Notes: generated by a model from the sequence alone, not told the origin. A stretch of 64,000 bases of DNA from Heteronotia binoei (GCF_032191835.1 NC_083237.1:66774001-66838000), one strand, 5' to 3'; positions 2-19,761 are shown, counted from the first letter of the stretch. Numbers and translations: made by a program.

Positions 2-2568
2 GTGTGCGCTCTGCAGAAGGTCATCGTCAGCCAGGCCCCTGTGCAGACCCCCACACAGCTTTTCATGTCTGACCTGGAGGTAAGGGGTCTGGAGAACCAA
101 CACAGCTGTCCTTGGCTCCCCAGCATTCGTTCAGATGATGATAAAAGAAAGAGAGGAGCACTAAGACATGGAGAGGTTTTGCAAGGACGCATTGTGTTTG
201 GGTGGGGGAGGGGGGGGAGGGAGAATGCTCCCCAGCTTAAACCCCCCCCCCCCAAAGGTCTACTGTCTCATGGCAGCTGGATAGATGCAGGCTGTGGATG
301 CCGCCTTGAGAGGGGAAAGCATTCTGCACGCTCTTCCAGGGTCCAGGACTTCAGGGGCTGACATAGATCAGAAGTGAGCTCACTTTCCCCGGGGAGGAGA
401 AAGCTCTTAATGCTTAGTAAGATGTGAGACGATGTTGTTGGCTTTGATTTCAGCTTTGTATTTTCGTATTGCTGGTTTCATTGTGGCTTGGATGGATTGT
501 CAAAATGTATAACTGAATGAGGAGATCTGCTTGAGGAAGGGGGTTGTTTACTTGAAAAAAAAAGTGGCAAGTGAATTAAGTAACAACAGCAGGCTTGGAT
601 ATCGGTACACCTCTGGTGCTGCCCAAAGTTTTAAATTAAATAATCCTGCCTGCAGCAAGTCAGGGGCAGCCTTGCCTGCCTTCTGTAGCCCCCCCTCCAC
701 CCACTTGGTCTGCTGTTCCTAGAAGCAACAAGGATCTCTGTGAGAATAGAAGCCATTCCCATAGTGGACAGACTTCCTGGAATGGTTGCTGTAGGGAGAT
801 GCTGGGATTGAATCTCTAGGAATCCCGCATAACGAAGCTAAGCTGCTGCACAGAGGGTCTCTTGATTCTGTTTTCCTTCTTTCTCCTTTTTCTCTCCCAG
901 GAGAACCACAGGAGTCCAGAGATCCTGGATCGGATTTATCGTAATAACCCTATCCTCTGCTACACAGCTGGCCCCCTCTATGCACCCCTGTTGCCTTTCC
1001 CTTATGGCGTCGGTCACAATGCAGGTACCCTCCCAGCCATGCTCTGCTTACGGGGCTGGAAATGGGAGCACAGAACTGGGGAGGGGGCTGGGGCTCTCGG
1101 GACATGGGGCCTTGGCTAATGGCTCCACTTCTGCCCCCCCGTTCTGCAGATGCCAGCAGCCGCGGCTATGCAGCGCTTCGCGATGAGGCTGTCAAGCTGT
1201 TCCACTCGCTGCAGCAGCTGGAGGGGGTGCGGGAGCCGGCTCTCCTCATGCAGGGGGTGCTGCAGACCTGTCTCGACCTCCCTCCGTTGGTAGATGAGAT
1301 CTACTGCCAGCTGGTGAAGCAGACTACAGAGCCACCTGCACCTGGGACCCCTGCCGACCTGCGTTACTGGCAGCTGCTCGCTTGCATGAGCTGCACGTTT
1401 CGACCCTCCCCACCTGTCCAGGGTTACCTGCAGCTGCACCTCCAGCGGTGAGGAATGTGGGAGGGCTGAGATCCCTGCAGGGTGAAGGAAGAGGGGCACT
1501 TCCTGTCTCCTTTGGGGACTCTGGGGGGCAAAAGGGGAAGCATTAGGGTTTGTAGAATCTTTCGGGCTCAAGTGCCGTGTTCTATTGGAGAAAGTTTTCC
1601 TTCCAGACGTTTCGTTCTCAGCTGCGGAGAACATCCTCAGTGGCGTTGCAGCTGGAGCAGGCGCTCTGACCTTCTTGGCTGCTGTGCATTGAGTGAGGCC
1701 AGGGCTGCTGGAGAGCTGCTATTTCTAGGCTGGAGGGGGTGTGGTGAAAGGGCAATAGGTTTGTGGATGTGCCTTTCACCACACCCCCTCCAGCCTAGAA
1801 ACAGCAGCCCTCCAGCAGCCTGGGCCTCACTCAACGCACAGCAGCTAAGAAGATCAGAGCGCCTGCTCCGGCTGCAACGCCACTGAGGATGTTCTCCGCA
1901 GCCGAGAACGAAACGTCTGGAAGGAAAACTTTCTCCAGTAGAACACGGCACTTGAGCCCAAAAAATTCGACAGACCCTAATGATGTTACCAGCCGTGAAA
2001 ACCTGAAATCTTTGATAAAAGGGGAAGCCTTTGAGCAAAGGAATTAACGCGGCCACAAGGGCTCTGTGACTAGCAGCCTCCTCAGCAGGATGGACAGCAG
2101 GCCCTGAAAAGCAGCCTCCTCAGCAGTGTCTTCTAGGGCTGAGTTACCCAAACCTGGTTTAGCCGCAGGGGAAGGTGATTTTGTCCTCTTGCCCTGCTTG
2201 AGCACTGCCTCGGGTCCAGCTGCTGCTGCTTGATTGACCCAAAGCTGAGCTGGATGGAGCATTGGCCTGCTTTTGGAGTGTCTCTGAAGCGGGGGGGTGG
2301 AATGCTGTGCAGGGTTCCCATGAATGGGGTTGTAGCCAAAGATCTTTGTGTGGTCTTCCTCTGCCCCAGCAGGACAGAGGATCGGTTCCCAGGCTCAGAG
2401 ATGGCACGATACGGACATTTCATCAAGGAAGCTCTGCGCAAGACTGAAGGACGGGAATGTGTCCCATCGCTGGAGGAGATTGCAGGGCTGATGGGACACC
2501 AAGAAGTGGCGGCGTGCCCCGGGCCTTGCCCAAGCACAGCCATGGCTTACCACACCACAGCACAGGAG
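2..2568 (+). CDS. PLEKHH3: PLEKHH3 (PH, MyTH4 and FERM domain protein H3), open MyTH4-region exons. The gene starts upstream of the window. Exons: <2-79, 901-1024, 1150-1447, 2373-2568
   Basis: The spliced peptides CALQKVIVSQAPVQTPTQL, ILCYTAGPLYAPLLPFPYG, RDEAVKLF..LMQGVLQTC..YWQLLACMSCTFRP and RTE..FIKEALRKTEGRECVPSLEEI..HTTAQE match the PLEKHH3 MyTH4 region as recalled. All junctions are GT-AG with compatible phases (0,1,2). Position next to TUBG1 fits human 17q21 synteny. Confidence 0.9.
1603..1643 (-). ncRNA. Mirror copy of the minimal hammerhead ribozyme motif on the antisense strand
   Basis: The reverse complement reads CCACTGAGGATGTTCTCCGCAGCTGAGAACGAAACGTCTGG, with the same intact core and stems. 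Confidence 0.7.
1880..1920 (+). ncRNA. Minimal type I hammerhead ribozyme motif, Penelope-associated, on the sense strand of the PLEKHH3 intron
   Basis: CCA-CTGAGGA-T-GTTCTC-CGCAGCC-GAGAAC-GAAAC-GTC-TGG gives the CUGANGA core, a 6-bp stem II, GAAA, a palindromic ACGU helix III and a 3-bp stem I. The predicted cleavage site is after C1917. Confidence 0.7.
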
Positions 2569-3021
2569 GTGAGGCTGGGCCCAGGGAGCCTGAGAGGTTG
2601 CAGAAAGGGGGCAAGGAGGAGGAGAAGTCTTCAGCAGGAGAGCTCACTGGGCGTCGCAGGCCTCCCTCAGGGGTGCCACTGAGCAGTGGGGAGGGGCAGC
2701 AGAGGTGAGCCTTCCTCCGAAGCACCAGCTGAGTCCCTGAAGCAGAACCTGTGTCCCCCCCCCCCGCCCTGTCCTTTCCTGGGCACATTTTGACCTTGTC
2801 TGCGTCCCTTTTGCAGCGCTGATAGCCCTCCTGCTGGGCGTGGCTGGGCTCGCTTTGTCCCGTTCCATGTGGTCCAGGAGTTGATGTCACCCCTGGGATT
2901 GGTCTGCAGCCCCAACTGCTTTGCCCTGCATGGGGCATGTGCCTGGTGGCAGACATGCTTATCAGGTAGATCAGCGTGGCCCTTGGCTGCCACTGAATGG
3001 GGCGGAGGGGCTCAGGAGTTA

Positions 3022-3242
3022 AACATAAACATATAAACATATGAAGCTGCCTTATACTGAATCAGACCCTTGGTCCATCAGTCAGTATTGTCTTCTCAGA
3101 CTGGCAGCGGCTCTCCAGGGTCTCAAGCTGAGGTTTTCCACACCTATTTGCCTGGACCCTTTTTTGGAGATGCCAGGGATTGAACCTGGGACCTTCTGCT
3201 TCCCAAGCAGATGCTCTACCACTGAGCCACCGTCCCTCTCCC
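3022..3242 (-). mobile_element. tRNA-derived SINE (Squam3-like), full-length monomer
   Basis: The reverse complement has A box TGGCTCAGTGG, B box GGTTCAATCCC, a body and the tail ..CAGTATAAGGCAGCTTCATATGT. There are many near-identical copies in the window. Confidence 0.85.
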
Positions 3243-3900
3243 CTAGTTGAGAAAGAATTCTCAGAAAAAGTCCTATGGCCCTGGGGAACGAAGATGGTTT
3301 GGCAGGCACGTTAATAGGGACAGCAAATGGTTAGAGCTGGGGGTAGGCTGGGCTGGGCTGTGAATGTGTGATTGCGATGGTGGAACTGTCAGTCCTAAGG
3401 TCTGTGCTCCTCTCCCCCACCCCTTCGGCTAGTGGAAGCAGAATAGAGCTTGCAAGGAAGCCCACGAGGGGCACATTTGTTTACCCAGGACAGGTTTGCA
3501 GTTTTTAAAAAATGTGAGATATAGGTGAGAAAAGTCTGTGTGACTTTATTTGGTGGGATAATAGGAAAAAAGGAATGTTGGCTCCTGTACTCAGGGCTGG
3601 CGCATGGGAGTAAGTGAGGTAGGCGCCTGCTTAGGGCGCTACCACACCTGGGGGAACCACTAGGCGCCCCCTTACTTCCTTAGGAAGCCTTTGAAGAATG
3701 CGCCATTTTAGCAGCGCCCCGCTGCTTAGTTTCAACCCAGACTAGTGGGGCACCGCTAAAACGTCGCACTCTTCGGAGAGCGTGGCGTTTTAGCTGCGCT
3801 TTGCCATTTTCCTCCCAAAAGTGGCCGGGTGCGGCTAAAATGCTGTGCTCTCTGAAGAGCATGGCGTTTTAGCTGTGCCCCGTTGCTTTTGGGATGAAAG

Positions 3901-4475
3901 TGTCACGTTCTCAGGATGCAGGCAGCTGGGAGTCCAAAGCCAGTCCAAGATCAAAGTCCAGGAAGTCAAACGGGAGCCAAGTCACCAAAGCAAAATTGCA
4001 AACCAGAATCAGAAGTCAGTGTCCAAAAGTCAAAGGGTCAGGGGCGCTGCTAAAATGGTGCATTCTTCAGAGGCTGCCAAGGAAATCAAGCAGGTCAGGA
4101 TCAGGAAGGAGCGTGGATGCAAGCCAGAGAATAGACTTGTTGCTTCCACAAGGTTACCAGGTCCTGGGTGGGAGCTATATGGGAGCCTCAATCAGCCTGC
4201 TCCCTGGGTGGCAGCGACTCTGCTAGAACTCAGGGCTGAGAGATCTGAAGCATCGACGTGCCTCGTGTCTTCGCTCTGAAAGTTCTTTCCGAAGCCTGCT
4301 TCGAACTCTTGAGATGGGAGGGGGAGAGCTTGGAGGAGATTGATTGTCAACAGCTGACACTGGTGCTTGGAGAGTGCTTGATGGGCCAGCTGCTGTTTGT
4401 TCAGCTGAGGAACTGGCTGGCAACTCTTCCAGGTCTGTTAACCCTTCCCGCTCCTTCTCGTCAGGGCTCATGACA
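3901..4475. mobile_element. Possible solo LTR-like element next to a hairpin-rich MITE-like block (about 3630-3900)
   Basis: It begins TGTCA and ends TGACA, with CAGGAGTC/CAAAGTC-rich low-complexity repeats. No TSD was found. An inverted repeat pairs about 3684-3720 with about 4043-4079. Confidence 0.35.
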
Positions 4476-4664
4476 CTAGGCCCCAAAGCCTGCCTAGAGT
4501 TTGAGACTCCTCCAACTACTCCCAGATAAACGTAGGCCCCAAATGGTGTTTCTCCACAAACCTAAAGAAACCAAGTTGGCTCCATAAGCAGCTCTCTAAA
4601 AACTTGAGAAATAAAGGCTCCTTTAGGAATTGGAAGGAGGGCCTTATAACCAAGGATGAATATA

Positions 4665-4860
4665 ATTTGGGAGAACTGGGTTTGATTCCCCACTCCTCCT
4701 CCACGTTCACCTGCTGGGTGACCTTGGGTGTTACAATTCTTGAAAGAGCTCTCCCAGCCCCACCTCCCTCACAGGGTGTCTGTTGTGGGGAGAGGAAGGT
4801 AAGGAGATGGTAAGGCGCTCTGAGACTCCAAGTGAAGGGCGGCGTAGAAATTCCATCTCT
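4665..4860 (+). mobile_element. tRNA-derived SINE (Squam2-like), 5'-truncated
   Basis: It contains GGGAGAACTGGGTTTGATTCCCCACTCCTCC...CTCACAGGGTGTCTGTTGTGGGG, shared with the copies at 37.6-38.5, 47.3-48.9 and 59.5 kb. Confidence 0.7.
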
Positions 4861-7800
4861 CCCCTTCAGTGGAATTGAAACTGGCTGGCATCTATGTGGC
4901 ATCTGGCAGTGTTAATTTGTTGCATTAATAGACAGAAAACCTGGGAATGGTGGGACTTAAGTCCTTGTCATTTGGCAATGTGAAGGTGTTGAATGGGGGT
5001 GAGGCCTAAGCTCACTCCCTTCACTGTCAGCAGGTGACAGAATGAGGTAAAGACCTCCTCTGGCCTTCACCGCCACCTAATCAGGCATCGGACAGTGAAC
5101 CAGAAGGGCCTTTATCCTGTGCTCAGTTTCCAAGTCTGTATTAGGTTGGGGAGACAGAAGGAAGTCTAGCACATGCTTTGACTTCAGTCTCAGCAAGAAA
5201 GATGGGATATAAACCAAGGAAATGCTGCCAGCATCCTTAGCTTAGTTTGCACAAACTGGGCTGCTGAGGAGGCAAAACCAGGTGGCACTAGTTGTGGCAC
5301 AACCTCAGGAATCGTTGGGGAGGGTGGCTGTCCTTCAGTCCTGAGCAGCTGGAAGAGAGATCCTCCAGAGGGTCAAATGGGGGATGGGCACGGCAGCACC
5401 CAGGTGGAGGAGCCCATGGGGGCAAACTCCAGTCTTCTGTTCCTCCTTCCCAGCACTGTATGTGGCGTGAAGAGAGAGAAACAACGGACGGGCTGTGGCT
5501 CAATGCTAGAGCCTCTGCTTGGCTTGCTAAAGGTCCCAGGTTCAGTCCCCAATGAATGATCAGGGCGTAGGTGATGTGTGAAAGATCCCAACTTGATACC
5601 ATGGAGAGGCACTGCCGGTTGGGTGTGATGGACCAAGGGAGTGGGTGGGATTCCGTATAAGGCAGTGTTCTTCACGTGTTCTGGGACTTCGAAGGGAGAT
5701 GAGCTCCTCCCAGTCCTTTTGACCTGCTGAAGAGGTGGGGGTGGTCTGGAGACTGAGAGCGGCTGTCCCCTCCTTCCTGCAGTGCCTGCCCTCCAGGAAA
5801 GGAGAGAGGACACCAGGAGGAGTGGGGCTGGACTGGGGTTGGCAGTGGGCATCCCTGCACTGATGGGCTGCCTGTTTGCCTGTCTGTCCTAGCTTAGCTG
5901 GCGAAGAGCCCCACCGGAAGCCCCCTGGCAGACTCTGCTTCAAGCACTAGGGATGCCCAGACATAGACAGCATCCCCCGTGACAGCCAGGAGCGCCTGCT
6001 GTTGTTTGAGCAGGTAAGGAGGGGGAAGCCGGGGCAGGGGGGCCCTTCCAAATGCCCCCTCTCTGCAGGCCCACAGACTGCTCCTCCGTGGCAGCGGGCG
6101 GCATCTGAGGAAACCCTGTAACTGCAGGCAGGCTTGTGCTTGCTGTGCCAGAGCGGCTGCCTCGACTGTTCCCTCTGGATCGGCTGCACTCCTGCCTTAG
6201 TCCCCACTGGCACCACCCTCAGATCCCAACGTTTCCTCTTGCACCTTCAGGGAGCATTTGCTACTGAACTATGGGCGGGGGGGTGCCACCCCTTTTGGAC
6301 AAGCAACAGGTGAAGCAGAAGCAACACCTGCAGGGGTGTCCCTGTGTACAAAGGCAGGGGCCACGGCTGCCTCTGTCGACCTGGTGGGGGGAGAGCCAGA
6401 CTTGGCTCCACTCTCCTTGACGTAGCCGCTCCTCAGGGGAGTTCTTGCACCTGCCTTTCTACACTCTAGGCTCGGCTTTGAGCCGTGAAGGGGGAGAGGC
6501 AATGACAAGAGGGGGATTCGGGAAAGTCGCTGTGAATGGAAAACTGTGCAAGAGAGACGGTGCTGGGGACCTGGGGGGTGCGGGTGGAGTTTTGTTGTGG
6601 GGGAAGGGAGGGCTGCTGCCCACTACTGAGGACAAGGGCACTGCAAGCCTCACTGCTGGCGTTCTGCAGCTTGAGCATGGCATGGCAGTTAAATGCCCTT
6701 GCCGTGGGCAACTCTTGCAACAACGGCATTCCGTGTCTCTCCCCTTCCCCTCTTTGGGGCCAGGACTGCCAGCCTCTGTGGCTTGTGCTGAGCCCCACGG
6801 GATGCTGCCAGCTACGGCTACCTCGGACCACGTGCTGCAGCGACGGGGCCGGGGTGATCAGGAACTCCTCTGGCACATACCCCAGGTGAGAGAGAGAACT
6901 GGAGACCAGTGCTGGCTGTCTCATGGGAATCCAGCATGCATGCTGCCGGGGCTCTCGGGGTAGAACGGCACACCCTACATTTGTATGCAAGGAAAAGCCA
7001 ACACAAATAACTTCTGTCTGATTTTAATGACGTTATAGAAATCGGGTACATTCGAATAACTGCATGAAATCATTCCTCCCGCCCTTGTTTCTACTGGTAG
7101 ACTGGCTTTCCTTTTGGACAAACTGGAATCTGCCACCAAGCAGGAAAGGAACAGCAACTGGGGTGAGAGGAAGGGGGCTTGGCTGGAAACAGGGGCAGGG
7201 ACAACCCCTGGGGGGAAAAGGCCTAAAAAGCAGTCTGTACCTTGTGTAGAACTATGCCACTTTCCAAGTTTCAGGTGCAGTGAAACTGAAAAAATTGGGT
7301 GCCTATAAAGAGGGCTGGACGGGTTTGCTATCCATATGTCCAGGCTTGCCGCAGAATCTCTTGAGTTCTACAAAAGGGTGCATTTGCCTCTTGGAAAGTG
7401 ACCTGAGGCAGCTACAGTGGACTGTTGCTAACTGTTCTTCACCCTTAGATGTTTTGGGCCCTCAAAGCCAGCAGGAAGTTGCATGAATCTGATTACTCAA
7501 GACCATTGGCATCCTCTGTGTGTAGGTGGATATTGCTTCCGCTAGCCCTTGAACATTTCACAATCCTGTTAACCACTTCTTCAGCAACCACACTGGCTTC
7601 AGCCTTGAGAGCTAAATATTTTCCCTCTCCCTTAGTGAAAACTGACAATTGTTAAGGCCCAGCTCTTTACAGAAGCCACAGTCCTCTCCCCCCCCCCCCC
7701 CACCGTGGCTGCATGTGGCGAAAACGGGTGACTAAGATCTGATGGCTTTCTGTTTCCATTCCAGGCCAAAGAAATTATGCAGCTCTTACAGGCACGCATA

Positions 7801-9005
7801 GCCAACAAAAAGCTATCCAGTATCCCAGTGGCCAAGCTCCAAGAGGGACTGCATCTACTCATCAGACTGCCTTTCCTGGACTTACTGCCTCTTTGTTCCC
7901 CAGGGCCAGTGCCTTAGCTGGACAGATGCTGACAGAGCGAGCACCGGTGGTTCACTGTGCTCCCAAGGAGCTGTGCCTGTCGTCTCATTTGCAATGACCT
8001 GGAGAGGCTCTCCAGCCTCTTGTGAAAACATGATAGTTGTGCACTTTCTCTGTGTGCTGCTTCCCTGTAGCATTCAGTAGCTAGTTGTTCCTAACACAGC
8101 TGCAGGCAGCTGTGCTTCTACACTGGCACCTTATTCATTCTGGTCCCACTGTGTCAGAAACACTAGGGGTGCAACAGTTGCCTGGACGGACCTGCCCAGT
8201 GTGGTGGCGTCCCTTTTGTAAAAATCTTTTTTTTTTAAAAAAAAAATAATAATAATAAACGAGGATGGAAAGTAACGTTTGCTCAGTGCCTCATTTTGTT
8301 CAGGGAAAGAATGACACTGTCCTATCTGATTGGACACCTTTCCTTGGCAGGTGTTGCTACCACTGCTGATCTTGTAGAATGGTAGGTTTGCTTACTTCGT
8401 CCCCTGCTCCCACTATGCACAGCAGTTATAACACAACTTAGGAGATCCTGTGCTTGTCTGACCCTTAGCGGCAGCAGAGCTGGGGAAACAGAACAAAGAA
8501 AGAAGTCACAGGGGAGGGCCAAAGACACACTGGAGGATTCAGTACTAAACCACAGTGGGTGGCTTTGATAGCTTCCCAAGCAATAGAAAGTATAAAACAC
8601 ATTATATTATATGGCAGAAGTGAAGATGGTCTTTTTTGGGCCAAAGACTTCCAAATTCCATTCCTGTAACTGGCCTCCAAGTTTCCTAGAGTCCCTAATT
8701 CTCAATCAGTCTGAAGGGGTCTCTTCCTAGGCAGAAAAGCTACCCGGATCCCACAAAGGTGCTTCAGCCCCTGCACAGCTGCTGCTTATGGCCACGCCCT
8801 CTCACTGTCCTGGTATCTCCACACTCACTATCAGCCCGTGTGTAGCTGAGACATATTTACTGTCTCAGAGACAGAGCAATGCAAAACGGCCAGTGGGGTG
8901 GCATGCTATACAGAAATACAGGCTCAGATTTGTTTTGTTTTAAATGGACAAGTGTTTCATTTGTCTACAGCAGTGCCCAAGTCCACCCAGGAGTGTGTTT
9001 CCTCA

Positions 9006-9327: not shown

Positions 9328-19761
<10,434 letters not shown>

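What the first reader, a model, noticed from the sequence alone, without database searches (positions are those of the whole stretch)
2869..7917. PLEKHH3 has lost its FERM-region exons: candidate lineage-specific truncation or unitary pseudogene
Seen in sequence: the four upstream MyTH4-region exons are open and splice in frame, but the downstream exons are disrupted. The exon at 2869 has acceptor CCAT instead of CCAG and an internal frameshifting deletion (FALH, then 11 nt, then LVADML). The exon at 5893 has an in-frame TAG at 5948. The exon at 6069 shifts frame near 6100 and reaches TAA at 6119. The exon ending at 6885 is shortened and out of frame. The last exon (AKEIMQLLQARIAN) is open but unreachable. 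A cryptic acceptor at 2814-2816 would give an immediate R-stop. Established: the human protein has PH-MyTH4-FERM architecture. Inference: this lineage makes either a FERM-less PH-MyTH4 protein or no protein. Point substitutions (AG>AT, a TAG) and large deletions are not typical indel sequencing errors, and the four neighbouring complete genes are intact.
Basis: partly seen in the sequence, partly recalled or inferred. Interest (0 to 1): 0.8.

Follow-up and report, generated by a model that had tools for sequence, protein, structure and literature searches.

The report
Gecko PLEKHH3 without its FERM domain
In Bynoe's gecko the PLEKHH3 gene has lost its whole FERM domain to exon decay but is still transcribed and strongly conserved as a shorter PH-MyTH4 protein, and every lizard and snake checked has lost part or all of the same domain, whereas the tuatara has not.

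Summary
The window is the 3' half of Heteronotia binoei PLEKHH3, next to gamma-tubulin as in other reptiles.

- **Intact exons:** E5 to E8 (2-79, 901-1024, 1150-1447, 2373-2568).
- **Decayed exons:** These are an AG>AT acceptor, deletions, a TAG, a frameshift with a TAA, and a GT>GG donor.
- **RNA:** reads join 2568 to 5893 and 6013 to about 6763, then run on unspliced. The reading frame ends at TGA 5980-5982, 29 codons after MyTH4. This matches the 371-residue RefSeq model.
- **Not a dead gene:** in the retained exons dN/dS is 0.09-0.13 between geckos. Changes private to Heteronotia are 14 synonymous against 3 nonsynonymous. Constraint stops at the domain boundary inside exon 8.
- **Not gecko-specific:** scincoid lizards lack the F3 lobe. 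Anoles, lacertids and anguimorphs lack F2 and F3. Colubroid snakes and geckos lack the whole FERM domain. Tuatara, turtles, crocodilians and birds keep it.
- **Lesions differ between lineages,** so the erosion was probably repeated.
- **No intact second copy** turned up in any squamate.
- **No paper** in the searched library reports this.

It is a real case of domain loss, of moderate interest.

The parts
2..79 (+). 3' part of coding exon E5 (end of the PH region and linker; VCALQKVIVSQAPVQTPTQLFMSDLE). The window starts inside this exon.
   Evidence: It matches the RefSeq protein P0156 exactly. tblastn with orthologues hits here.
901..1024 (+). Coding exon E6. The orthologous donor is at 1024|GT. 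The RefSeq model uses an in-frame alternative donor after 1012, which drops the residues GHNA.
   Evidence: No reads were laid here, so donor usage was not tested.
1150..1447 (+). Coding exon E7, the core of the MyTH4 domain.
   Evidence: Pfam MyTH4 at E=4.2e-20. It is 91% identical to Gekko kuhli and 88% to Pogona.
2373..2568 (+). Coding exon E8. It holds the end of MyTH4 plus, over about 2491-2568, the relic of the first strands of FERM lobe F1. That relic has lost 5 codons relative to other sauropsids and evolves almost neutrally.
   Evidence: Alignment. Omega is 0.53-1.05 in the tail against about 0.1 in the core, Fisher p=0.0005-0.014. Three of 4 differences between RNA individuals in this tail change the residue.
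2869..2967 (+). Dead remnant of E9 (F1 lobe, first exon). The acceptor is AT at 2867-2868, there is an internal gap of about 32 nt, and the donor is lost. It is not in the mRNA.
   Evidence: Alignment. Read depth is zero over 2700-2899, and the RNA joint 2568>5893 skips it.
5893..6013 (+). Remnant of E10 (F1 lobe, second exon), still used as an exon. Because E9 is skipped it is read in a shifted frame (LSWRRAPPEAPWQTLLQALGMPRHRQHPP), with the stop at TGA 5980-5982. In the ancestral frame there is a TAG at 5948-5950.
   Evidence: RNA joints 2568>5893 (7 reads in X10) and 6013>about 6763 (9 reads plus one contig). The tail of P0156 matches. Alignment.
6069..6434 (+). Dead remnant of E11 (F2 lobe, 453 nt in turtle). 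It has a 1-nt deletion near 6100, TAA at 6119-6121, several larger deletions and a GT>GG donor. It now lies within an intron.
   Evidence: The RNA joint 6013>6763 skips it.
6763..6885 (+). Remnant of E12 (F3 lobe). It is 123 nt against 192 nt in turtle and is out of frame. It is now the first part of the untranslated terminal exon. Other individuals carry an extra C after 6840.
6763..8100 (+). Terminal exon and 3' untranslated region as seen in RNA. Reads and contigs run from 6763 across the former intron 6886-7763 without a splice. The true 3' end, somewhere near 8100-8260, was not determined.
   Evidence: one X1 contig covers 5891-6010 joined to 6761-7148, further contigs cover 7119-7558, and depth continues to about 8100. 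Some of the depth beyond 7700 could belong to the convergent gamma-tubulin gene.
7764..7917 (+). Remnant of the last coding exon E13 (AKEIMQLLQARIANKK...). It is an open frame, but it lies downstream of the stop and is not translated in frame.
9328..16030 (-). Neighbouring gamma-tubulin gene (TUBG1-like), convergent with PLEKHH3. This is the same arrangement as in the six other squamate loci fetched with wide flanks (L001-L006).
   Evidence: Open frames with a gamma-tubulin C-terminus (9328-9600) and N-terminal region (15725-16030). Pfam Tubulin genes lie downstream in L001-L006. blastn shows collinearity with Gekko.

Best explanation
This is the true (syntenic) PLEKHH3 orthologue of Heteronotia binoei. 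The five exons that encoded the FERM domain (E9 to E13) no longer contribute FERM sequence to the protein; four of them (E9 to E12) are visibly decayed.

**How the transcript is built (shown by RNA).**
- E9 has lost its acceptor (AG>AT) and is skipped.
- Exon 8 therefore splices to the E10 remnant in a shifted frame.
- Translation stops at TGA 5980-5982, 29 codons after the MyTH4 domain.
- The E10 remnant then splices to the E12 remnant.
- That remnant, the retained former last intron and E13 together form a long 3' untranslated region.

**Inference about mRNA stability.** The stop lies 31 nt before the last exon junction, so the mRNA should escape nonsense-mediated decay.

**The product.** The predicted protein is PH-MyTH4, at least 371 residues by the RefSeq model.

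**Selection (shown).** The PH-MyTH4 part remains under strong purifying selection, including on the Heteronotia branch itself. Constraint ends at the MyTH4/FERM boundary, which lies inside exon 8.

**Likely function (inferred from homology).** The closest solved relative is the myosin-X tail, where MyTH4 is reported to bind microtubules and FERM to bind receptor tails. On that basis the gecko protein probably keeps the PH and MyTH4 activities and has dropped whatever the FERM lobes bound.

**Wider pattern.** This is one endpoint of FERM erosion seen in every squamate examined:
- F3 is lost in scincoid lizards.
- F2 and F3 are lost in iguanians, anguimorphs and lacertoids.
- All three lobes are lost in colubroid snakes and geckos.

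The disabling lesions differ between lineages. This points to relaxed constraint on FERM early in squamates followed by independent decay (inference).
For: **Identity and synteny.** P0156 (RefSeq, H. binoei, 371 residues) matches the window exons exactly. Gamma-tubulin lies downstream on the minus strand, as in the six other squamate loci fetched with wide flanks.

**Decay.** Searches show the lesions listed under the observation check.

**Transcript structure.**
- The joint 2568>5893 (GT..AG) has 7 reads from 5 start points in X10.
- The joint 6013>about 6763 has 4 reads in X9, 5 in X10 and one 518-nt contig in X1. These come from two separate studies.
- No reads fall on 2700-2899.
- Depth is continuous over 6763-8100.

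**Selection.**
- Over 202 codons, NG86 omega is 0.128 for Heteronotia-Gekko (bootstrap 0.08-0.20), 0.122 for Heteronotia-Paroedura and 0.086 for Heteronotia-Eublepharis. The turtle-alligator baseline is 0.17.
- Maximum-likelihood omega is 0.112, with lnL -2146 against -2321 when omega is fixed at 1.
- Changes private to Heteronotia are 14 synonymous and 3 conservative nonsynonymous.
- The exon-8 tail has omega 0.5-1.0 and differs from the core at Fisher p=0.0005-0.014 in geckos. It does not differ in turtle-alligator or anole-cordylid comparisons.

**Domains.** Pfam finds MyTH4 at 1.6e-25 and PH at 3e-4 in P0156, with no RA_2 or FERM_M. Tuatara has all of them.

**Squamate-wide pattern.**
- The longest isoforms are at most 715 residues in about 30 squamate species.
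- Decayed E11 is seen in Anolis, Eublepharis and Thamnophis. Hemicordylus has an intact E11 (omega 0.16-0.20) but a decayed E12.
- An F2-F3 query from tuatara finds no gecko, snake, iguanian, anguimorph or lacertoid protein.
Against: - There is no protein-level evidence.
- Expression is low, at a depth of about 1-2 reads when 6% of each run was read.
- The first exons of the gene lie outside the window. The RefSeq model starts at an internal Met in E3, so I could not confirm an intact 5' end in this species.
- The RNA runs come from individuals that differ from the reference by 1-5%.
- No independent DNA reads confirmed the single-base lesions.
- Pairwise omega averages over two branches. The estimate for the terminal branch rests on only 17 changes.
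- The claim of independent erosion rests on not finding shared lesions in alignments of heavily decayed sequence, with DNA from only 4 geckos, 1 cordylid, 1 anole and 1 snake.
Confidence: 0.85

Rival explanations
1. The whole gene is a unitary pseudogene or a non-coding transcript. On this view the open PH-MyTH4 exons have simply not yet been hit by mutations, and no functional protein is made.
For: The C-terminal half is destroyed. Expression is low. The RefSeq model lacks E1 and E2. There are no protein data.
Against: Omega is 0.09-0.13 across gecko-gecko comparisons with dS of 0.5-0.6. Heteronotia-private changes are 14 synonymous to 3 nonsynonymous. Fixing omega at 1 is rejected by 2*delta-lnL of about 350. 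All splice sites of E5 to E8 are intact. The selection boundary coincides with the domain boundary inside exon 8, which neutral decay would not produce.
Confidence: 0.07
2. This locus is a decayed duplicate, and an intact PLEKHH3 with a FERM domain exists elsewhere in the genome.
For: I could not search the whole H. binoei assembly.
Against: Synteny with gamma-tubulin is conserved, and in Paroedura also with a 7tm receptor gene upstream and RETREG downstream. RefSeq lists one PLEKHH3 for H. binoei. A tuatara F2-F3 query against 5.8 billion proteins returned no gecko protein. Three other geckos show decay at the same syntenic locus.
Confidence: 0.03
3. The lesions are assembly or sequencing errors in the reference, and the real gene is intact.
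For: No independent DNA reads covered 2867, 5948 or 6119.
Against: RNA from two studies uses exactly the splice pattern that the lesions predict and skips E9 and E11. The lesions include multi-base deletions of 19-58 nt and changes at splice sites. Gekko, Paroedura and Eublepharis, from independent assemblies, carry their own lesions in the same exons.
Confidence: 0.02
4. Other, unrecognised exons or an alternative isoform restore a FERM-like C-terminus.
For: Only 6% of each raw RNA run was read, so rare isoforms could have been missed. Thirteen weaker joints were not displayed.
Against: tblastn with four full-length orthologues finds no further FERM-like segment between exon 8 and the gamma-tubulin gene. 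Only two intron joints passed the read threshold, and neither restores the ancestral frame.
Confidence: 0.02

Closest known systems
Vertebrate PLEKHH3 (PH-MyTH4-FERM), for example tuatara P0158 (780 residues), turtle P0178 (790) and alligator P0214 (778)
   Same: It is the orthologue by synteny and by sequence. The PH and MyTH4 exons are 60-90% identical, and the exon structure E5 to E8 and the splice phases are the same.
   Different: The FERM domain is gone. E9, E11 and E12 are dead, E10 is read out of frame, and E13 is untranslated. Pfam finds no RA_2 or FERM_M. The protein ends 29 residues after MyTH4.
Myosin-X tail (MyTH4-FERM cassette; PDB 3AU4, 3AU5, 3PZD)
   Same: It is the closest solved homologue. 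E=5e-66 over P0156 residues 113-343 against chain residues 4-242, which is the MyTH4 part of the cassette.
   Different: There is no motor and no FERM. From my own knowledge, in myosin-X MyTH4 and FERM pack together as one unit and FERM binds receptor tails. Here MyTH4 stands without FERM.
PLEKHH3 of other squamates (RefSeq models: Eublepharis 427 residues, Paroedura 467, Thamnophis 424, Anolis 580, Hemicordylus 715)
   Same: The PH-MyTH4 part is conserved in all of them, and all have an eroded FERM domain at the same syntenic locus.
   Different: The extent of loss and the lesions differ. The cordylid keeps F1 and F2. The anole keeps F1 and has a new tail encoded by the decayed E11. Heteronotia has its own lesions: the E9 acceptor AT, the E10 TAG and the E11 TAA.
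ARHGAP39 (Vilse/CrossGAP), a protein with a MyTH4 domain but no FERM
   Same: From my own knowledge only: it is a precedent that a MyTH4 domain can work without an adjoining FERM domain.
   Different: It belongs to an unrelated family (WW-MyTH4-RhoGAP). It was not compared here.

Membership tests
PLEKHH3 orthologue group (by descent) | Best sequence match to PLEKHH3 rather than to PLEKHH1, PLEKHH2 or MYO10 | tested here: met
   The top named hits are all PLEKHH3. Exon 7 is 88-91% identical to lizard PLEKHH3.
PLEKHH3 orthologue group (by descent) | Conserved gene neighbourhood (gamma-tubulin downstream, convergent) | tested here: met
PH-MyTH4-FERM architecture (PLEKHH family definition) | PH domain | tested here: inconclusive
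   Only the last 26 codons of the PH region lie in the window. In the RefSeq protein P0156, Pfam PH scores 21.6 bits against a cut-off of 25.1. Full-length orthologues score about the same, 23-27 bits.
PH-MyTH4-FERM architecture (PLEKHH family definition) | MyTH4 domain | tested here: met
   Pfam PF00784 at E=4e-20 for the exon and 1.6e-25 for P0156. Omega is about 0.1.
PH-MyTH4-FERM architecture (PLEKHH family definition) | FERM domain (F1/RA_2, F2/FERM_M and F3 lobes) encoded in frame | tested here: not met
   There is no RA_2 or FERM_M hit in P0156. E9 to E12 carry stops, frameshifts, deletions and dead splice sites. The mRNA frame ends before them.
Unitary pseudogene | Neutral evolution (omega close to 1) across the whole former coding sequence | tested here: not met
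   Omega is 0.09-0.13 in E5 to E8. Only the exon-8 tail and the E9 to E12 remnants look neutral.
Unitary pseudogene | No functional copy elsewhere in the genome | tested here: inconclusive
   No FERM-bearing PLEKHH3 from any gecko appears in the protein database. The whole assembly could not be searched.

The most novel reading that the evidence does not exclude
The FERM domain of PLEKHH3 became dispensable in the squamate stem lineage. It was then eroded independently at least three times: F3 in Scincoidea, F2 and F3 in the ancestor of lacertoids, anguimorphs, iguanians and snakes (with F1 lost further in snakes), and F2 followed by F1 and F3 in geckos. Throughout, the PH-MyTH4 half stayed under purifying selection in some 11,000 species. 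That would make squamates a natural separation-of-function experiment for a MyTH4-FERM protein. It would also point to an unknown FERM ligand or pathway that was lost or rewired at the origin of squamates.
Probability: 0.55. Interest if true: 0.6.

Novelty: new variant of a known kind. Interest (0 to 1): 0.45.

Why it matters
MyTH4 and FERM domains almost always occur together and are thought to act as one structural unit. PLEKHH3 itself has no established function.

A clade-wide natural truncation that keeps PH-MyTH4 under selection says two things. The N-terminal half has a function of its own. The FERM-dependent function was dispensable in lizards and snakes but not in tuatara, turtles, birds or crocodilians.

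This gives a concrete comparative handle. One can look for the FERM ligand in chicken or tuatara and ask what happened to it in squamates.

It also warns annotators that the short squamate PLEKHH3 models are real and not assembly faults. Gene-loss screens that score a gene as simply present or absent would misclassify it.

Tried and rejected
- **Locus look-ups that failed.** Look-ups of P0002, P0180, P0153 and P0160 found nothing, because only the longest isoform of a gene is indexed. I solved this by listing cluster members and using the X1 isoforms.
- **DNA run X4.** It covered only the SINE-like repeats (3030-3240, 4500-4900) and 7239-7548. It gave no independent DNA check of the point lesions.
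- **TAG at 5948-5950 in RNA individuals.** I could not confirm or exclude it. The X1 contig over 5891-6010 has 4 differences, of which only 5942 and 5979 were displayed.
- **Literature.** 76 papers mention PLEKHH3. None of the top results that combine it with squamate, gecko, snake, lizard or pseudogene actually holds the gene name.
- **Earlier notes of this scan.** There was nothing on this finding.
- **A lesion shared by all gecko families in E9 to E12.** None was found. Only the three gekkonids share an insertion in E11. The loss therefore cannot be dated to the gecko ancestor by a shared mutation.
- **Not run.** No structure prediction or complex prediction was run, because neither would change the verdict.

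Full report
**What the window is**

The first 8.3 kb of the window, on the + strand, carry the 3' half of a vertebrate PLEKHH3 gene.

- Four exons (2-79, 901-1024, 1150-1447, 2373-2568) read open and join in frame.
- Exon 1150-1447 matches Pfam MyTH4 at E=4e-20.
- A profile-free search of 1.8 billion representative proteins with that exon returned PLEKHH3 relatives.
- A named search identified the species. RefSeq protein P0156, 'pleckstrin homology domain-containing family H member 3 [Heteronotia binoei]', 371 residues, matches the window exons residue for residue.
- On the minus strand from 9328 onwards lie gamma-tubulin exons. The six other squamate PLEKHH3 loci fetched with wide flanks show the same convergent arrangement. 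This is therefore the syntenic orthologue.

**Exon map**

Mapping turtle (Macrochelys, 790 residues) and alligator proteins onto their own loci gives 13 coding exons.

| Exons | Encode |
|---|---|
| E1-E5 | N-terminus and PH |
| E6-E8 | MyTH4 |
| E9-E10 | FERM lobe F1 |
| E11 (453 nt) | F2 |
| E12 (192 nt) | F3 |
| E13 | C-terminus |

The window holds the end of E5, then E6, E7 and E8 intact, followed by remnants of E9 to E13.

**Check of the observation**

| Exon | Window coordinates | Lesions |
|---|---|---|
| E9 | 2869-2967 | Acceptor CCAT where turtle, cordylid, anole and Gekko have CCAG; internal gap of about 32 nt; donor destroyed |
| E10 | 5893-6013 | Both splice sites and full length kept; TAC>TAG at 5948-5950 |
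| E11 | 6069-6434 | 1-nt deletion near 6100, which brings TAA 6119-6121 into frame; several larger deletions; donor GT>GG |
| E12 | 6763-6885 | 123 nt instead of 192; out of frame |
| E13 | 7764-7917 | Open |

The cryptic acceptor at about 2816 does give Arg then stop. The similarity of the remnants to real exons is far beyond chance. blastn against cordylid exons gives E=4e-28 for E10 and 9e-12 for E9. tblastn against tuatara gives E=5.5e-11 for E10.

**What the RNA shows**

Two raw RNA-seq runs of the same species label and one assembled RNA run from a different study were laid on 2300-8290.

- Exon 8 joins directly to 5893 (GT..AG; 7 reads from 5 start points).
- Nothing at all lies on 2700-2899, so the E9 remnant is not used.
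- The 5893-6013 exon joins to about 6763 (9 reads in two runs and a 518-nt contig). This skips the E11 remnant.
- Reads and contigs then continue from 6763 through the former last intron to at least 7558, and depth continues to about 8100. No supported splice was seen at 6885.
- Skipping E9 shifts the frame. The E10 remnant is translated as LSWRRAPPEAPWQTLLQALGMPRHRQHPP and ends at TGA 5980-5982, exactly as in the RefSeq model.
- The stop lies 31 nt before the last exon junction. By the usual 50-55 nt rule the mRNA should not be a target of nonsense-mediated decay. This is an inference and was not tested.

**Is the rest of the gene alive?**

I extracted codons for Heteronotia, Gekko kuhli, Paroedura, Eublepharis, Anolis, Hemicordylus, Thamnophis, Macrochelys and Alligator from their loci.

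- Over the 202 codons of E5 to E8 that lie in the window, excluding the last 26 to 31 codons of E8, gecko-to-gecko dN/dS is 0.128, 0.122 and 0.086. Bootstrap upper bounds are at most 0.20. The turtle-alligator baseline is 0.17.
- A codon model gives omega 0.112. Fixing omega at 1 costs 175 log-likelihood units.
- At codons where the other three geckos agree, Heteronotia has 14 synonymous and 3 conservative nonsynonymous private changes.
- The last 26 to 31 codons of exon 8 encode the first strands of F1. There, gecko-gecko omega is 0.53-1.05, and the ratio of nonsynonymous to synonymous changes differs from the core at Fisher p=0.0005-0.014. No such contrast exists in turtle-alligator or anole-cordylid comparisons, where F1 is retained.
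- Three of the four fixed differences between the RNA individuals and the reference in this tail change the amino acid.

Selection therefore follows the domain boundary, not the exon boundary. PH-MyTH4 is maintained and FERM is not. This argues strongly against a unitary pseudogene.

**How wide is the loss?**

The named search and the cluster listings show that the longest annotated PLEKHH3 isoform in about 30 squamate species is never full length.

| Group | Longest isoform (residues) |
|---|---|
| Geckos | 351-586 |
| Colubroid snakes | 422-441 |
| Pythons | 553-568 |
| Anolis, Sceloporus, Pogona, Elgaria, Podarcis, Rhineura | 573-584 |
| Scincoid lizards (Hemicordylus, Tiliqua, Lerista) | 711-715 |
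| Tuatara, turtles, crocodilians, birds | 775-812 |

Genomic checks confirm that this is decay and not an annotation fault.

- Hemicordylus keeps E9 to E11 intact (E11 omega 0.16-0.20) but has only traces of E12.
- Anolis keeps E9 and E10 (omega 0.22), but its E11 is full of stops.
- Thamnophis has stops in the E9 and E11 remnants.
- Eublepharis has a nearly full-length E11 remnant with stops and dead acceptors at E9 and E10.
- Gekko and Paroedura have large deletions.

Pfam agrees.

| Species | PH | MyTH4 | RA_2 (F1) | FERM_M (F2) |
|---|---|---|---|---|
| Tuatara, cordylid | yes | yes | yes | yes |
| Anole | yes | yes | yes | no |
| Garter snake, Euleptes, Heteronotia | yes | yes | no | no |

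A search with tuatara residues 505-740 (F2-F3) returned 90 proteins. The only squamates among them were the three scincoid lizards, which matched over F2 alone. No intact paralogue is annotated in any squamate.

**Order of events (inference)**

- The lesions in E9, E10 and E12 differ among the four geckos. Only the three gekkonids share an insertion in E11.
- Scincoid lizards branch between geckos and the remaining squamates, and they keep a constrained F2. The F2 losses in geckos and in the anole-snake group must therefore be separate events.
- E12 is still well recognisable in geckos but nearly erased in the cordylid, which suggests separate F3 losses as well.
- The simplest reading is that constraint on FERM was relaxed early in squamates and erosion then proceeded independently.
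- In Heteronotia the probable order is E11 first (shared with gekkonids), then E12 and E9. E10 came last: it has one stop, no indels, intact splice sites, and is still spliced.

**Comparison with known things**

- The closest solved structure is the myosin-X MyTH4-FERM cassette (3AU4 and 3PZD; E=5e-66 over the MyTH4 part).
- The gene is a PLEKHH3 orthologue by descent, but it fails the family's defining architecture because FERM is not encoded.
- The truncated product is already present in RefSeq.
- I found no paper in the searched library that links PLEKHH3 to squamates or to a FERM loss.
- I class it as a new variant of a known kind. It is an ordinary evolutionary mechanism, domain loss by exon decay, applied to a domain pair that is normally inseparable, and it is clade-wide.

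**Limits**

- There is no protein evidence.
- Expression is low.
- The 5' exons are outside the window.
- No independent DNA reads cover the point lesions.
- The whole H. binoei assembly could not be searched.
- The count of independent losses rests on seven squamate loci.

Noticed in passing
L004 31640-31852 (Anolis); proteins P0276, P0171, P0002, P0198: Anolis, Podarcis, Pogona, Elgaria and Python share a C-terminal tail of about 70 residues (..WSIVCWTV..VVGLWxCPL). In Anolis it is encoded inside the decayed E11 remnant in a shifted frame. This looks like a shared ancestral lesion that became a new terminal coding exon.
   Followed up: partly
P0151 (Euleptes), P0152 (Sphaerodactylus), P0035: E11 is 453 nt, a multiple of 3. 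The sphaerodactylid gecko models read E10 to E12 to E13 in frame without F2, and so does a 641-residue representative (P0035). An E11-skipped isoform may have been fixed before the exon decayed. No DNA was available to test this.
   Followed up: no
window 2491-2568: The RNA-seq individuals differ from the reference at 2500 C>A, 2514 G>A, 2519 C>T and 2549 A>C. Three of these change the residue (Q>K, P>L, Y>S). Most reads are 95-99% identical to the reference, which indicates divergent lineages under one species label.
   Followed up: partly
window 6840: An extra C after 6840 in the E12 remnant is seen in the X10 reads and the X1 contig. It is an indel polymorphism in a dead exon.
   Followed up: no
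window 1541-1982: A large inverted repeat sits in intron 7 of PLEKHH3. Another note of this scan (s1-322625) describes it as a Penelope-derived palindrome with hammerhead motifs. The two arms are visible by eye.
   Followed up: no
window 3030-3240 and 4668-4699: SINE-like, tRNA-derived repeats in the long intron draw hundreds to thousands of reads and produce many false 'goes back' joints in the read tables.
   Followed up: no
window 1012-1024: There are two in-frame donors for exon E6. RefSeq uses 1012|GT, which drops GHNA. The orthologous donor in other geckos is 1024|GT. No reads were laid here.
   Followed up: no
window 9328-16030, minus strand: Gamma-tubulin (TUBG1-like) exons appear intact, convergent with PLEKHH3. 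The two 3' ends lie within about 1 kb of each other.
   Followed up: partly
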